In this document: in pieces, positions 1 through 8,400 of the stretch
Position numbering within the stretch: the stretch's first letter is position 1
Layout of the letters: each line of letters starts with the position of its first letter
NCBI GenBank assembly: GCA_964035545.1
Contig: OZ037769.1
Location: forward strand, 15,406,633-15,470,632
Source of the DNA: Bugula neritina
Taxonomy: Eukaryota; Animalia; Bryozoa
Reading direction: 5' to 3'
DNA length: 64,000 nt
Made by a program: the position numbers and the translations under genes
Notes under the pieces: generated by a model
The model's database searches: none
Told to the model about the DNA's origin: nothing
Seen by the model: only the letters and a program-made list of their open reading frames with translations

Positions 1-3000
1 GCAAAAGTTCTAACAGAGGAACTTTACAATGACCTCAAAGGCAAGGAGACAAAAGGCGGAGTAACTCTAGATGACTGTATTCAGACAGGTGAGTGTAAAA
101 CCCATCCCCTCTCCTTCTAACTTATGTATGCAACGTGTGCTTTAACTATATGATACGGTGTGTCATATTGAGTGAGAGTCAGTCAAGTTAAGTCACAATG
201 AGTCAAACTAAGTCAAAGTAAACCATAGTCAGTCACATTAAGTCAAAGTAAGTCACAATGAGTCAAATTAAGTCAAAGTAAACCATAGTCAGTCAAAATA
301 AGTCCTGGCAAAACACAGGGAATCAAACTGATGCAAACTGAATCATATTATTACACTTCTGTAGGACACAAAACAAATCTGGTAAACAAAATATGAATCT
401 ATAATTTAAAAAATGTAGCCTCAAATCTAAATCTTTACTTTCAGGCGTAGACAATTTAGGAGAAGCTGGGGCAGAGCCAGTGGGAGTAACAGCCGGAGAT
501 GAGGAGTGTTTCAGCATGCTGTCTGCACTCTTTGACCCCGTAATTGCTGCCGCTGGTGGCAAGGTAGGTTTTAGCAGCAGTTTAGCTGTTCAGAGGCATT
601 TACCAGGCTTTAACATGTAAGATAATTGAACTGTGGGCATTGTAATGATTTATTATATTTGAGCTTTTTACCAGCTCTTACTTCCAACAATTCTGTCACT
701 ATGTAACTCATACAAACTTGCTTCTATCAACTCATGGATCAATCTTGTTTCTGCTGCATTAGGCCGGCAGCCATGTCAGTAGCTTAGACGGCAGCAAACT
801 AGGCAGCACCGACTTTGACAAAGATCTAGTGGGCGATTGTCAAATCAGCGCTGGAAGGAATATCCGAGGTTTCCGTCTCTCACCATCCATTGACCGCGCG
901 GAGAGACGCAATGTTGAGAAGATTGTGTCTGATGCTGCTGCCACTCTGGACGGCTCTCTCAAGGTCAGCTGATCACATTGTGTCTGTCACAAATACGACT
1001 AGCAAAGTGGGCACAACTCCTCAGTGTGTAATACTTGAACCTTTTGTCATATTATAGTGGTGCATTATTTTGGACATTGGCTTGTCAGATGATCGTTTTA
1101 GCTGGAGTTTAATGTAATATAGAGTTTGTTGATATTTTAGTAGGTCACACTGAAACATCATATATGTAAATGTATAAAGACATGTATTTTTAATCAACCT
1201 GTAATACGTAATCTTAGTCAGGAAAGTCTATAAATAAAGTATTTTAAAGAGTTTAACCGAAAACCCTCTGCTTACAGGGCAAATACCAGTCTTTGAAGAA
1301 CATGGGTGATGCTGATAAGAATAGACCAATCATGTTCCAGAAAATCTCCTGCCCTCATTTGCTTTCTGCAGGTTAGTTGAGTGTTTGGAAGTAGCCTATG
1401 GGGCGTTATAAGAAAACTGCAATATGGCTTTTTAATGCCGAAGGTCTCATTTTTAAATTAGCGTAACTCTATTTTTAATAAAATTAATTCAACAACTCAT
1501 TTAAAAGAGCTTTTTTAGCTTTAACTTAGAATTATTGAGTTCTCTTATTATGAAAAATCAGCAACTGAATAAATTAGCAAGTGCAACTGTATGCTATCAA
1601 CTTTTATTACCTTCACATCATTATACACGTTTATATAATATTTTGGTTATTGCACAAAATTGTCCTTGCTTGGCTGACATTTTATTGTTATATACACAAT
1701 GTCATCCACAATGTTTTACACAATGCCCTACACAACGTCCTAAGCATGACTATAACATAATTGAACGCAAACCCCATCATTAGCTGATACAATGACTGCT
1801 CCATTGTTACTATTTCTCAAACAGAAGTACGCAGAGACTGGCCTGATGCACGAGGTGCCTTCACCAACGACAGCAGCGACTTCGCTGTCTGGGCTAATGA
1901 GGTGGACCATGCTCGAGTGGTTGCCAGGGGACAAAGTCTCTCAGCTGTAAGTTTCCGGTATAATCCTCTTATAGTTATCAGCCTCGTTCAGACTTAATCA
2001 TCAAAATGGTGGTTATGAAAATGTAATAAATTGCTACTCTCTAAATGTTCAACAAATATTTGTATCTATTTCCATATTACTTTAAATGCATGGCTAACTA
2101 ATTTTACAGTAGCTGCTGTTTATTATTTAAAAATTATTAATTTATGCTAGTTACTGTAGTTCACATTGAATATTGATAAAGTGAGATCTTGAGCTACATA
2201 ACAACCTATTACAAGTAAAGAATAATACTGTCAGATTCCATGTAGCTAATTTGCTGAATAAATTATTTGTGTCAATTATTCAGGTGCTTGCCAAGTTATC
2301 AGAAGGTTTGACCAAGTTTGATGCAGCTGTGAAGAAGGCAGGCAAAGAGTTCATGTGTAATGATCGCCTTGGTAACCTTGGGCCCCGCCTAGATTGCCTT
2401 GGTACCAGCTTGCAGGCCTCAATCTCGGTGAAAATGCCCAAAGTGTGCTCTCATGATAAAGTTAAAGAGGTAGAGTTGTATTCTCATGTCATGCATTATA
2501 GAGATCATTGCTTTTCTGCAGAGGAACTACACTTTTCTGAAACTCAGCCAAGTTTGATTTTAGGGAAGATAACTCTAGTTTTTCACAACAGACTATAATA
2601 ATATTATAACTTTTCATCACTAGCTATATTAAATAAGTAACTGTGAAATTTTTTGTTAATGAAGGTCACAATAATTTCACAGCATTTTTCCTTTGTACAA
2701 AAACACTTTCAAAACTTTAAATATAAACTGAACTAATAAAATAAAATAACATAATATTATCACATAAAGTAGCCTAATCATAAAAATGACAGATTTTGGT
2801 AAATTTTTGTGTGAAGTTACTTGTGAAAGTTAAAAGTTTGTGGTAAACTTAAATCTGAACATGGGACATGTAGTTATAGGCACTAGTTTCATTCTGTGCA
2901 CCTGTTTTTCAACTATTTAAATGTCTTCACAGATTTTGGCAGGATTACAGCTGAGAAAGGAAGTGGGCAAAGACGGAGGTGAAGTAATTTCAAATAAGTG

Positions 3001-3951
3001 CACTCTGGGATCTACTGAGGTGAGAGTTCCTTTTGACATGACCACTTGCAGGTCCATGTCACATGACCACCTGCCAGGTCTATGTCACATGACCACTTGC
3101 AGGTCCATGTCACATGACCACTTGCAGGTCCATGTCACATGACCACTTGCAGGTCCATGTCACATGATCATATGCAGGTCTATATCACATGACCACTTGC
3201 TGGTCCATGTCACATGACCACCTGCAGATTCATGTCACATGACCATTTGCTGGTCCGTGTCACATGACCACCTGCAAGTCCATGTCACATGACCACTTGC
3301 TGATCCATGTCACACGAGACAGCTTAGAGTATTTAAATGAATATAACTAAAAAGAAAAGATAATTCATTTTAACACATTTTACAAACAATAAGTGTTTTA
3401 AGTCACACTTGAACAACCTTCACAGCTGGCAAACTAGATCAACTAAAGACTGCACTTTATTTTAAGCACATGTGTCATTTTGATAGGCAATAAATTATAA
3501 AGTAACCATTAGAAAGTATATATGTACTGAAATGCACAGAGTTGCTGATTTAGCTATATCAGAACTTTTATAGTGTCGGTAGTCTGTAAATAATGATTGA
3601 TTGATTGAAAGTTTGATTTATATATAATGAAAATACAATGATTTATGTAATTGTTGGAAAATTAAGCACCATGCTTCTGTCATAAATTCTGTCAGATTAA
3701 GAGAAGCTAAATTTTTGATCTTGTCTTGTCTATTAAACGCTACTTTTATTATGCAATCAATTTTGATGTCTTGCACAATACAAGGTTAGAGTTATTGCAT
3801 GCTGACGTAGAGTCATGGTTTTCAGGTTGACCAGGTTAAGTGTCTGGTGAGTGGCGTGCAGCACTTGTGTAAAATAGAGAAGGCTCTGGCTTCAGGTAAA
3901 GGTGCTGATGACCTGATTTCTCAGGCTGTATCTGGAAAGGTCAAGGTCTAA
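1..3951 (+). CDS. Phosphagen (ATP:guanidino) kinase family protein, creatine-kinase-like; 5' partial; probably catalytically inactive
   Basis: Exons 1-88, 445-563, 763-963, 1278-1371, 1825-1946, 2284-2469, 2933-3019 and 3826-3951 are all GT-AG, phase-compatible, and give 340 codons plus TAA. The translation has CK-type blocks: AKVLTEELY, TLDDCIQTGVDN, VGVTAGDEE, LFDPVI, GRNIRGF, ERRNVEK, RDWPDARG, LGT, SN..LGSTEV. Catalytic motifs are degenerate (see findings). Confidence 0.9.
176..304. repeat. Degenerate 10-bp-period tandem repeat (agtcaaagta-like) in the first visible kinase intron
   Basis: Repeated agtca/aagtca units. Confidence 0.8.
3035..3315. repeat. 25-bp minisatellite (cacatgaccacttgcaggtccatgt), about 11 copies, just after the donor at 3019
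   Basis: Direct reading of tandem units. Confidence 0.9.
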
Positions 3952-5462
3952 AAGGGTTCGTAAGAATTTCTACTTATCATCAGAATGAACTAAATAAATA
4001 CAAATTTATTTTTAACTACAAATTGCTAATAATTTGATAATAAGTTTATGAAGTATAGACAACGTTTTTCATGTATCGAAGTCATTTAGCTTAAAGCCAA
4101 TCAAGCATTGGCTTTCATCATTGAAAGACTGTGATTGGCTAAGTAGCCATGCCTTCTAAGTGACTGAAAAGGCAGTCACTTATTTGTATGCTTCAGAAAC
4201 AAAATGGTAAAATTTTGAGCTCTTCAATTATGTTAGTCTTTTCGATCAGGGTTTAAAATAAATGTTTTTGGCAAAATAAAAAGCTCACTAATGGAAAAAT
4301 GCAGTTTTTAGACGCGGATTGAAAGTAAGGTTTCCTTGGTTGCTCCTTTTAGCTTCAACTTGAATTTTTAAAATAACAAGTGATAGACTAGTTGTATATG
4401 ACATGCTTAGATCAGACATACATATAAACCAAGACAAACAGAAAAATGTGAAAGCTAAAATTTTTAATTAAAATGCAAAACTAATATCTTTTTGATTAGT
4501 CCAATTTTAACAGGATAATAATTGTATTTGGTTTATTTAACCAATTAAAATAATACACAGACTCATTATATAAGAAAATAATTTGCCGTTATTTTGTAGA
4601 AGGACCCATTTCAAGGTATGACAAGAGATAAAGTTAGCAGACGCACAAAGACTGTGCCTAAAACTGTCTGTATTGAGAGAACCATCTCACAATATGTTTG
4701 CCGTGGAAATTGTTGTCTTGTGTTGAGTGGTTGTAGATTGACTCATTGAATGTAAATTTTTACTTCCAAGTAGAAATCAATAGTAAATTATGCAGAATAT
4801 TTTGTTTTACATATCTGTTGACTGTACTATCTTTTAGCCACTATTTATATACAAATGCTTTTCTAGTGTTAAGCCTTGTTTTGTATGCAGCAGTTTAGAT
4901 CTATAAATAAAAAGCTATTTTAACTGTCGTTGGCAATTGAAACTTTACATTACATTTGCATATTTAAATTTAAAAATTTATTTGCAAAAAAATAAAAACT
5001 AGGAGTTATCGCACCTAAAGTAATTTGTCTATGGAGACTTGCATTCTATAGAACATGTCAAAAGTTACGGTGATAGTAAGTAGTATATGCTGATACTTGC
5101 GTAAATGAGAGTAAAAAAACTATTAATAATATAATTAAAATTTTTGTACAAAAAAATAAACAAGAGCAAGTGAGTGGGCAACTCCCGTGCATGCAGAAGC
5201 TTGCAAGTAACATAAACTGGGAGAAAATAACTCCCACATCAGTAATTATAATCTGTAACGCCCTTAACCTAAGTACCAATATGAACAGTGTTCAAACTTA
5301 AACCCGAAATCTAAAGCAACCTGGTGTAAACTTCATCATGTACTCAACATTGTCAACTGAATTAGTTAGTTTCATGAAATTACAATGGCACAATTGGATG
5401 ATGAATATATATTGTTGCTGTACAGTAAGTAGGATAGAGTGAGTATTTGGTAGTTGTCTTCC

Positions 5463-8400
5463 CTAGCTCTGTGTATCGTCTGATTCACTAAGTGGCGGGG
5501 TCGGAGGTAAATTGTCCGTTTCAGCGTTAGACGCGAGTGGCGTGGTCTCAGTGACGGCGCCGTTGTGTGGGTAAGCCGGAGGTTTAGACGTCTGCTGCAT
5601 CAACGGCTCGGTCTCTGCCGGCTGCGACTTGTTGATAGTCTGTAGCTCTCCTTCCATCACCACAGGGACGCCTGCTTCTATGTAGGTGCCGTTGCTCTTG
5701 CTCACATTACGGCTGTCTTGCCTTCTGTGACGTATGCAGACGACAGCCACCACAATAACTATAATAACTACAACTATGACTACTGTGAGAGGAATAATAA
5801 CGTACAACACGGTGTTATCTTGACTAACCGATCCGCCTGGAACGGGAGCCGTAACTTCCCACTTGTCTTGAGCTGGCTCAATCACGTCGATACATGCCTT
5901 TTGAGGAGTAAAAGAAGCTTCCAGAAGCTTATAAGGCGCACATTTTGCTGCAAAGTCTGTTTTTATATTGCCTTCTGCATCAAAGAGTTTATTTTTGTAA
6001 CCTTGTACGCCGACGCAGCCTGTCTGAGTACGCTCGTCCATTTGAGAGTCGTACAACCCAAATGCCACCACCACCGAACCAGAGGAGATTTTACTGATCT
6101 TCACTTGAGTCGTACCTGATTCATCAAACAGACCCTTCACCTTGCTGTACATGCTAACTTGAGATTTGACATCATTGGCAAACTGTGAGAAATTCTCATC
6201 AAAGGTTAGAGTAAAGAGATTGTTTATACTGTCAGTGTTAGATGAGAGAGCGACCTGTACTTCGATAGGGAAGTTTGCCGTCTTCCCGTTAGAGTCTGTA
6301 GCCACAAGGCTGTATTGAAACTTTCTACGACTGGTGATGCCCCATGGAAGGCCCATAATGGTGCCTGTTTGCTTGTGGAGGTAGATCCAGTTAGCTGAGT
6401 TCAGCTCCACTCCGTCTGTGAGCAGCTCCAGCTTCATGAACTGCAGGTTTATGTCCTCCTGTAAGGGACATGACAATATGACTGCTGTGAGACGCAAGAA
6501 ATTAACTAGCAGTACAGAATGTTCTAGAGAATAAATTTTGCCTTAAATTATAAATATTATTGAAAGTTTGGTAATAATTTATAATATAAATTAAATTATT
6601 ATTTTGTGATTGGCCTTTTCTGACAAAACGTTACAGAATAAGCTTCAAACACCATCAAACTGGCAGCCCTCAACAGTTGATCATATTGACTGAAGCTGGC
6701 TGATGAAGACTCATAAATCTTAGCTACTCCATGACTCATATTCAGTTCTAACAAACACACACAGCAGTGCCAACACTCACCTGGTCTTCAAACAGGTTTA
6801 CCGGGACTTCCACTTTGAACAACTCTCCTTCCACAGCCACCAGCTGAGACATAAAAGGGTCAATGACAGATATGTCGGTGGTTTTAATCGGAGAAGAATT
6901 CTCACAGGGAAGTTTTGGAAAACTGCGCACGTAGAGGATGTCTAGTTTAGAGATAGTCTTATAGATGAGCAGCTGCAAGTCCTTCAGTTGCCGAAGTGTC
7001 TTGAGATCCTTACTGCAAGCATACAAAGTGTGTGAGACTCGGCGAGAATGAGTGAGACTTGGGGAAAATGAGTGAGACTTGAGGAAAATGAGTGAGGCTT
7101 GGAGAGAATGAGTGAGACTTGGCGAGAATGTGTGAGACTCGTGGAGAATGTGTGAGACTCTCTAAGAATGAGTGAGACTTGGGGAAAATGAGTGAGGCTT
7201 GGAGAGAATGAGTGAGACTTGGCGAGAATGTGTGAGACTCGTGGAGAATGTGTGAGACTCAGAGAGAAGAGTAGTAGAAGGGATTTGCAAGAGGCAAAAG
7301 TTCAAAATATCTCAATTGGAAAAAGAGGAGGTTCTGCCATTTCAAACTGATGGGTTGAATAATTGCACGTCGTCATTTACTTAAAGATGCAAAATAATGG
7401 TAAAAGTGTTAATTATAATAATATATTCTAAACACTTGGCAACTAAATATTATATCTTTATGGAAATAATTTGAATATTCTGACAAAGTATTTCAGAATG
7501 TAATTAAAAACAAGTGGAGGGTTGGCCTGGGAGAATAAGCCGGTTTCTAACTTTTCCGTAAAACACCGTGTCTGTCGAGATTTAATTATTAATTTATCTT
7601 CTTGTTGCAAATTAAAATTCAATAATACGCCTGCTTAGTGTCTAACAGAATGGAATTAAAGAGAAATATTCTTGTATCAGTCTGTATTAACTTCTAGTGT
7701 TTCTCTGTTAGACTTGAACCCAGCCAAAACTTGAAGAGACAAGAACTAACATAAAGCTTAAAACAGACTAAACAAGATGCACCGAAAACAAATCCGTTCT
7801 CTTTTAAATGCATTTTAAACTTGAACTAATCAAATATAATTCTAAATTTTCGAAGTTGATAACCAAACCCTGGACTCTCTAAGGGTTTGTCAGAGATTAG
7901 ATTATGGATTAATGCAGCTTTACAGAAAAACAATTTTGGTGGTGATGTCATACATAATCGCGAGAATCCTGTTATACTCCAGTACAAACTGCCAGGTGCA
8001 CAAGAGAACCAACATACGTACCTGTTGACGTCAGTTGGACATAGAGATGCCGAGTGACCAGCTGGCGGGGATACCGAGAACTTGACGGTAGCCTTGTCGG
8101 AGTACTCCACGCCATCCACCGTAATCTGTCTGTCCTCTGAGCCTATCAGCAGGGGGTTGAGGGTGTACACCAGATCCAGCATCTGGCGGGCTGAGCCGCT
8201 GAAGGGGGCGGCCACGGCCATGGCGTATAACTGTAATTATTATACAGCATATTTAGTAGAAATTTTATGCTCTCTTTGTTAGGAGATTAAAAGTTTATTA
8301 GAATCAGTATTAGCATTAAGAGTGCTCAACAAGGGAACATAACTTCCTATATTCTATAAGACTTGTGGTCAGACAGTTGAGAGAGTTAAATAGTTTCTTA

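What the first reader, a model, noticed from the sequence alone, without database searches (positions are those of the whole stretch)
1..3951. Intact but apparently catalytically dead phosphagen kinase (pseudoenzyme)
Seen: eight clean exons with no stops or frameshifts and conserved fold blocks. Compared with creatine kinase motifs (vertebrate numbering, from established knowledge), the changes are: SSRVRTGR to DCQISAGR (R130 and R132 lost); NEEDH to NEVDH (catalytic E232 lost); YILTCPSNLGT to NLGPRLDCLGT (reactive C283 lost at its aligned position); LRAGVH to LQASIS (R292 and H296 lost); QKRGTGGVDTAAVGG to RKEVGKDGG (R320 lost and the flexible loop about 7 aa shorter); the DDHFLF histidine is absent. 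Only R236 of the five phosphate-binding arginines remains. Inference: selective loss of the active site in a preserved ORF points to a non-catalytic role (structural, crystallin-like, regulatory heterodimer partner, or a dead C-terminal domain of a multi-domain kinase such as the flagellar CK type).
Basis: partly seen in the sequence, partly recalled or inferred. Interest (0 to 1): 0.8.

Follow-up and report, generated by a model that had tools for sequence, protein, structure and literature searches.

The report
Dead half of bryozoan phosphagen kinase
In the moss animal Bugula, an energy-buffering enzyme carries a second copy of its own fold that has lost its active site but is still conserved by selection, most likely as a built-in silent partner that holds the working half in its paired shape; no such dead domain was found described for this enzyme family.

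Summary
But this is not a stand-alone dead enzyme. It is the C-terminal domain (D2) of a 17-exon, 748-aa two-domain protein of Bugula neritina whose first domain (D1, upstream of the window) has a complete active site. Synteny, 14 of 14 intron positions and trees show the gene is domains 1+3 of the three-domain flagellar creatine kinase, which is intact in the bryozoan Watersipora; the middle domain was deleted. Two tandem paralogues upstream share the layout and a dead D2. D2 is under purifying selection (dN/dS 0.10, against 0.018 for D1), keeps 9 of 9 creatine-kinase dimer-interface residues and only 3 of 15 active-site residues. D1 has arginine-kinase-like specificity changes. Best reading: D2 is a non-catalytic built-in dimer partner (about 50%); scaffold/targeting, allosteric and passenger roles are rivals. 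Expression and activity were not tested. The scan earlier noted other features of paralogues A and B and a separate degenerate mitochondrial kinase in this genome. New variant of a known kind.

The parts
1..88 (+). Exon 10 of 17 (3' part; starts about 80 bases before the window): start of dead domain D2, N-terminal helical subdomain, with interface residue D54
   Evidence: PF02807 E=7e-9
445..563 (+). Exon 11: D62 kept; specificity loop altered (H66>E); R96-H97 deleted
763..963 (+). Exon 12: S128>D, R130>Q, R132>S at 835-849; dimer-interface R148, R152, K156 kept
1278..1371 (+). Exon 13: 4-aa deletion removes H191; K196 kept
1825..1946 (+). Exon 14: R209-D210-W211 kept; NEVDH at 1896-1910 (E232>V); R236 kept at 1914-1916
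2284..2469 (+). Exon 15: C283>R at 2386-2388; R292>Q and H296>S at 2410-2427
2933..3019 (+). Exon 16: R320>E at 2960-2962, flexible loop 7 aa shorter, D335>V, R341>T
3826..3951 (+). Exon 17: C-terminal helix and stop codon (3949-3951); protein ends -KVKV
3993..3998 (+). AATAAA, candidate polyadenylation signal 42 bases after the stop
   Evidence: sequence; use not tested
5472..6482 (-). Last coding exon of the neighbouring dystroglycan-like gene; synteny marker shared with the Watersipora flagellar CK locus
   Evidence: PF05454 E=7e-22; tblastn E=7e-66 to L035

Best explanation
Window 1-3951 encodes domain 2 of a two-domain phosphagen kinase made from the three-domain flagellar creatine kinase by deletion of its middle domain (shown by synteny, introns, trees). 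D1 does the catalysis and has probably switched from creatine to arginine (inferred from sequence). D2, the old domain 3, no longer binds substrate or transfers phosphate (inferred from lost residues) and is kept under purifying selection (shown). Most likely it serves as a built-in silent subunit: creatine-kinase-type enzymes work as dimers, and D2 offers D1 the conserved dimer surface, within one chain through the 35-aa linker or between two chains, so that D1 stays folded and active (inferred, untested).
For: In-frame 17-exon model with D1 intact; D1 15/15 and D2 3/15 active-site residues. Same layout in tandem paralogues A and B. Watersipora XP_067930370 has three intact domains, the same dystroglycan neighbour, and intron positions identical to Bugula D1 (7/7, domain 1) and D2 (7/7, domain 3), none of the domain-2-specific ones. 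Tree: the three D2 plus bryozoan domain 3 form one group, 100/99. dN/dS 0.10 (17.5 N, 45.5 S; p about 1e-15) against another B. neritina lineage; paralogue B D2 0.045; linker 0 N, 4 S. Literature interface residues (PMC4754747, PMC7934860) D54, D62, R148, R152, K156, K196, R209, D210, W211: 9/9 kept in this D2, 8/9 in all three D2, against 68/187 other conserved positions (p=0.002). A CK-like N-terminal arm with an invariant WRATPK motif is kept in all three D2. Single changes at E232, R292 and R320 equivalents cut human mitochondrial CK activity to 0, 10 and 2% (PMC5133464).
Against: No structure of the full-length protein, no activity assay, no RNA or protein evidence for this gene. The interface list is short, chosen by me from two papers, and several residues (R209-W211) are also structural. 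Kept interface residues do not say whether D2 pairs with D1 or with another D2. The two-domain arginine kinase of Anthopleura packs asymmetrically, not as a pseudo-dimer (PMC12467219), so tandem domains need not mimic the dimer. D1 keeps its own interface (8/9) and could homodimerise without D2.
Confidence: 0.5

Rival explanations
1. D2 is a scaffold or targeting module: it docks the active D1 on cilia, myofibrils or an organelle, and carries paralogue-specific tails.
For: The three paralogues differ mainly in D2 (45-52% identity, against 79-86% in D1) and in the tail after it: an acidic Glu-Pro-Lys tail in A like that of Watersipora, -SKL in B, -KVKV in C. The ancestor is a flagellar isoform.
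Against: A 350-aa fold is not needed to carry a short tail; no partner is known. Not exclusive with the best explanation.
Confidence: 0.2
2. D2 is an allosteric sensor, like the non-catalytic half of mammalian hexokinase I or of eukaryotic phosphofructokinase (own knowledge), binding a nucleotide or other anion and tuning D1.
For: W228, N230, D233, H234 and R135 are kept in all three D2; this D2 also keeps E231 and R236.
Against: Four of five phosphate-binding arginines, S128, H191, H296 and D335 are gone, and the cleft has decayed differently in each paralogue (R236 is R, Q, H; position 130 is Q, W, R), which argues against one conserved ligand.
Confidence: 0.13
3. D2 is a trapped passenger with no role of its own; selection acts only against misfolding of an abundant protein.
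For: dN/dS is five to six times higher than in D1 (Fisher p=0.015); about half of the family-conserved positions are lost; long branches. An AATAAA in the intron before D2 could give a D1-only transcript.
Against: One nonsense change would remove D2, yet it survives in three old paralogues (synonymous sites in D2 saturated) and in two lineages; surface interface residues are kept preferentially.
Confidence: 0.14
4. D2 keeps weak kinase activity or has gained another catalytic activity.
For: A cysteine sits three residues after the lost C283 in this paralogue; paralogues A and B keep E232.
Against: That cysteine is K in A and B; C283, R132, R292, H296, R320 and R96 are lost in all three.
Confidence: 0.03

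Closest known systems
Three-domain flagellar creatine kinase (Watersipora subatra XP_067930370; Chaetopterus AAR14888; sea urchin P18294)
   Same: Syntenic orthologue of the Watersipora gene; D1 66% identical to domain 1, D2 49% to domain 3; identical intron positions; paralogue A keeps the acidic tail.
   Different: Middle domain deleted; domain 3 has lost its active site; domain 1 has lost the creatine-specificity residues (H66-P67-I69 loop shortened, V325>E); gene triplicated.
CK-derived dimeric arginine kinase of the sea cucumber Apostichopus (PDB 3JU5)
   Same: Best solved-structure match to the first D1 exon; similar shortened specificity loop with a Phe after the DNP motif; R96 kept.
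   Different: That enzyme is a single-domain homodimer of two active subunits. D1 groups with bryozoan flagellar CK domain 1, so the likeness looks convergent (3JU5 itself was not in my trees). The substrate of D1 is untested.
Two-domain phosphagen kinases (Anthopleura and clam arginine kinases; trematode taurocyamine kinases)
   Same: Two tandem phosphagen kinase folds in one chain of about 80 kDa.
   Different: Those keep the catalytic motifs in both domains (cysteine motif seen in both domains of 4RF6 and 4WO8) and arose by duplication-fusion, not by deletion from a three-domain gene.
Active-plus-dead tandem enzymes (hexokinase I, eukaryotic phosphofructokinase, JAK pseudokinase; own knowledge)
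   Same: A catalytic domain fused to a homologous non-catalytic one kept by selection.
   Different: Other folds; their dead halves keep a ligand site, while here the cleft has decayed differently in each paralogue.

Membership tests
ATP:guanido phosphotransferase (phosphagen kinase) fold | N-terminal (PF02807) and C-terminal (PF00217) domains | tested here: met
Active phosphagen kinase domain (D2) | Five phosphate-binding arginines, E232, C283, H296 | tested here: not met
   only R236 kept
Active phosphagen kinase domain (D1, upstream) | Same residue set | tested here: met
   15/15
Flagellar creatine kinase | Descent from the flagellar CK gene (synteny, introns, tree) | tested here: met
Flagellar creatine kinase | Three contiguous active domains | tested here: not met
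   two domains, one degenerate
Flagellar creatine kinase | Creatine-specificity residues H66, P67, I69, V325 | tested here: not met
   absent from D1 (loop deletion, E325) and from D2
Flagellar creatine kinase | Location in flagella or cilia | not testable with these tools
   none
CK-derived arginine kinase (D1) | Shortened specificity loop and Glu at position 325 | tested here: met
   AK-type proteins carry E325
CK-derived arginine kinase (D1) | Phosphorylates arginine | not testable with these tools
   a paper on B. neritina arginine kinase is cited in PMC6429109 (ref. 176) but is not held
Pseudoenzyme domain | Loss of catalytic residues in an intact reading frame | tested here: met
Pseudoenzyme domain | Maintained by purifying selection | tested here: met
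   dN/dS 0.10 (gene C), 0.045 (gene B)
Pseudoenzyme domain | Fold retained | tested here: inconclusive
   only a 210-aa fragment of paralogue B was folded: pLDDT 58, Foldseek best match CK E=5e-13, TM 0.5
Pseudoenzyme domain | Expressed as RNA and protein | not tested
Pseudoenzyme domain | No measurable catalysis | not testable with these tools
   needs an assay
Pseudogene | Stops, frameshifts or dN/dS near 1 | tested here: not met

The most novel reading that the evidence does not exclude
The Bugula lineage rebuilt its flagellar creatine kinase into its only working phosphagen kinase, an arginine kinase, and turned the last domain into a dedicated pseudo-subunit that both completes the dimer and controls or positions the active half, with paralogue-specific tails sending the copies to different compartments; together with the degenerate mitochondrial kinase this would be a whole creatine shuttle converted into one active domain plus pseudoenzymes.
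Probability: 0.25. Interest if true: 0.8.

Novelty: new variant of a known kind. Interest (0 to 1): 0.57.

Why it matters
Why creatine-kinase-type enzymes are dimers, and how the domains of the contiguous flagellar enzyme interact, are old questions usually approached with engineered dead subunits. This gene is a natural active-plus-dead pair with an intact, syntenic three-domain relative in Watersipora, in three paralogous versions. It makes the contribution of the partner subunit to stability, cooperativity and substrate switching directly testable, and adds the phosphagen kinases to the families with conserved pseudoenzyme domains. It may also identify what the reported arginine kinase of Bugula larval settlement, an antifouling target, really is.

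Tried and rejected
Stand-alone dead enzyme or crystallin: rejected, D2 has no start of its own and is fused in frame to an intact D1. Young pseudogene: rejected by dN/dS. Alternative exons restoring the motifs: none in 1-5400. Recent tandem duplication of D1 giving D2: rejected, D2 has the domain-3 intron pattern. An intact flagellar CK or a canonical protostome arginine kinase elsewhere in the genome: not found with PF00217, PF02807, P0063, P0211 or a flatworm AK; these counts are lower bounds. Single-base gaps in exons of GCA_010799875.2 (L032) and short gaps in L031 were treated as assembly errors, since L030 is intact, and those exons were left out. It named no place as human-like; single exons of that stretch were later used by reference in protein searches. 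The joined 748-aa model was built only inside scripts; it was not sent to any search or folding tool, so domain packing was not modelled. No degenerate orthologue outside the B. neritina complex was found, but length limits and ranking make this a weak negative. Literature searches found no described phosphagen-kinase pseudoenzyme; subscription papers are not covered.

Full report
Observation. The eight exons are real and read in one frame with canonical GT-AG introns: 1-88, 445-563, 763-963, 1278-1371, 1825-1946, 2284-2469, 2933-3019 and 3826-3951 with TAA at the end. Pfam finds both phosphagen kinase domains. These positions are 98-100% conserved in the reference set. R96, S128, H66, D335 and R341 are lost as well. 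Twelve of 15 active-site positions are gone against 54 of 120 other highly conserved positions (p=0.01). No hidden exon with intact motifs lies in the introns.

What the gene is. The window starts inside a gene. The genome search placed it at G000:C5:15406633 and showed six phosphagen kinase domains in 44 kb, alternating strong and weak. Reading upstream gave a 17-exon, 748-aa model: ATG about 4,000 bases before the window, an N-terminal domain D1 (residues 6-362) with 15 of 15 active-site residues, a linker of about 35 residues, and the finding as D2. Two tandem paralogues, A and B, have the same structure and also a degenerate D2. All three D2 have lost R96, S128, R132, C283, N286, R292, H296, R320 and R341; E232, R130, H191 and R236 differ between them, so decay began before the triplication and went on separately. 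Database fragments 90-97% identical are annotated as Bugula neritina (KAF6024027.1, KAF6024028.1), so the genome belongs to that species complex.

Selection. An intact allele from another B. neritina lineage (L030) differs in D2 by 45.5 synonymous and 17.5 non-synonymous changes: dN/dS 0.10, p about 1e-15 against neutrality. D1 gives 0.018 and the linker no amino-acid change. Paralogue B gives 0.045 for D2. D2 is therefore constrained as protein, though five to six times less than D1 (p=0.015). This is indirect evidence of translation; direct RNA evidence could not be obtained.

Origin. The best match to both domains is the three-domain flagellar CK of the bryozoan Watersipora subatra: D1 to domain 1 (66%), D2 to domain 3 (49%). 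Both loci have the same dystroglycan-like gene downstream on the opposite strand. Intron positions and phases agree 7 of 7 between D1 and domain 1 and 7 of 7 between D2 and domain 3, while Watersipora domain 2 has its own pattern. The Bugula linker exon begins in phase 1 like the exon that ends domain 1 and ends in phase 0 like the exon that ends domain 2, as expected if a deletion between the similar ends of domains 1 and 2 removed domain 2 (inference). Maximum-likelihood trees group the three D2 (100/100) with Watersipora domain 3 and a second bryozoan-like domain 3 from a metatranscriptome (100/99), and the D1 with Watersipora domain 1 (86/86). Both of those domain-3 sequences have complete active sites, so the loss arose on the line to Bugula.

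The working half. D1 lacks the H66-P67-I69 loop and has Glu at 325, where 97% of CK domains have Val and arginine kinases Glu. Its first exon matches best the CK-derived dimeric arginine kinase of a sea cucumber (3JU5), including a Phe in the specificity region, where Phe63 of the sea cucumber enzyme is tied to arginine affinity (PMC11492440). No canonical arginine kinase and no intact three-domain CK was found in the genome, and an arginine kinase has been reported from B. neritina (reference 176 of PMC6429109; paper not held). The only other family member, a mitochondrial-type gene on C4, has E232>R and C283>S. So the three D1 seem to be the only complete active sites in this animal, and probably use arginine (inference).

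How D2 most likely works. Catalysis is very unlikely: in human mitochondrial CK the E232 equivalent to Ala abolishes activity and the R292 and R320 equivalents leave 10% and 2% (PMC5133464), and D2 combines these with more. What D2 keeps is telling. Cytosolic CK is a stable dimer whose monomers are less active (PMC7934860). Of nine interface residues, eight named in PMC4754747 and PMC7934860 plus W211 from my own knowledge, this D2 keeps nine and all three D2 keep eight, against 68 of 187 other conserved positions (p=0.002) and 1 of 15 active-site positions; E19 and D55 were left out because they vary among flagellar CKs. D2 also keeps a CK-length N-terminal arm with an invariant six-residue motif. 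I read D2 as a built-in silent subunit that supplies the dimer surface to D1 (0.5). Rivals are a scaffold or targeting role (0.2; the paralogues end in an acidic tail, -SKL and -KVKV), a passenger kept only against misfolding (0.14), an allosteric sensor (0.13) and residual catalysis (0.03). Shown: gene structure, residue losses, selection, orthology. Inferred: absence of catalysis, D1 substrate, domain packing. The joined model was not sent to search or folding tools; a fold of a paralogue fragment was low in confidence but matched CK structures.

Comparison and novelty. Multi-domain phosphagen kinases are well known, but the characterised ones keep catalytic motifs in every domain. Active-plus-dead tandem enzymes are known in other families (own knowledge). 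The searchable literature gave no phosphagen kinase pseudoenzyme. Unnamed database proteins show the same thing arising elsewhere: P0108 (three domains, third dead), P0129 (second and third degenerate), P0198, a krill four-domain AK P0204 with a degenerate last domain, and four-domain protist-like proteins with all domains degenerate. The case is thus a new variant of a known kind, probably one of several undescribed ones, and unusually well anchored by an intact syntenic relative. Interest 0.57.

Noticed in passing
G000:C5:15366900-15374420 and 15384050-15395820 (L024-L027): Two tandem paralogues (A, B), each active D1 plus dead D2. The late D1 exons are nearly identical among A, B and C while D2 synonymous sites are saturated, which suggests gene conversion confined to the catalytic half.
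   Followed up: partly
L029:4478-4483 (154 bases before the window): AATAAA in the intron between the linker exon and D2; read-through meets a stop after 8 codons, so a D1-only isoform is possible. Paralogue B has one too, A does not.
   Followed up: no
G000:C4:20585150-20588650, minus strand (L028): Mitochondrial-type kinase with E232>R, C283>S, H191>G, V325>T but all five phosphate arginines kept: a second, independent degenerate phosphagen kinase.
   Followed up: partly
G000:C5:15395690-15395815: Paralogue B ends in Ser-Lys-Leu through a 10-base last coding exon.
   Followed up: partly
P0004, P0010, P0016, P0017, P0018, P0013: Protist-like proteins of 1,400-1,800 aa with three or four phosphagen kinase domains, all with broken catalytic motifs; one has a PH domain, one a weak RIIa docking domain. 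Possibly an undescribed family of flagellar structural pseudoenzymes.
   Followed up: partly
P0108, P0129, P0198, P0204: Multi-domain CKs or AKs with one or more degenerate domains, including a krill four-domain arginine kinase whose last domain lost R236, R292 and R320.
   Followed up: partly
P0183-P0197: Unnamed four- and five-domain creatine kinases with all domains intact, longer than the classic three-domain form.
   Followed up: no
window:5472-6482 (-) and upstream exons to at least 8845: Dystroglycan-like gene, convergent with the kinase, syntenic in Watersipora.
   Followed up: partly
window:3036-3314 and 177-329: Intronic minisatellites: 11 copies of a 25-base unit right after exon 16, and a 30/60-base repeat after exon 10; related copies occur on other contigs.
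   Followed up: no
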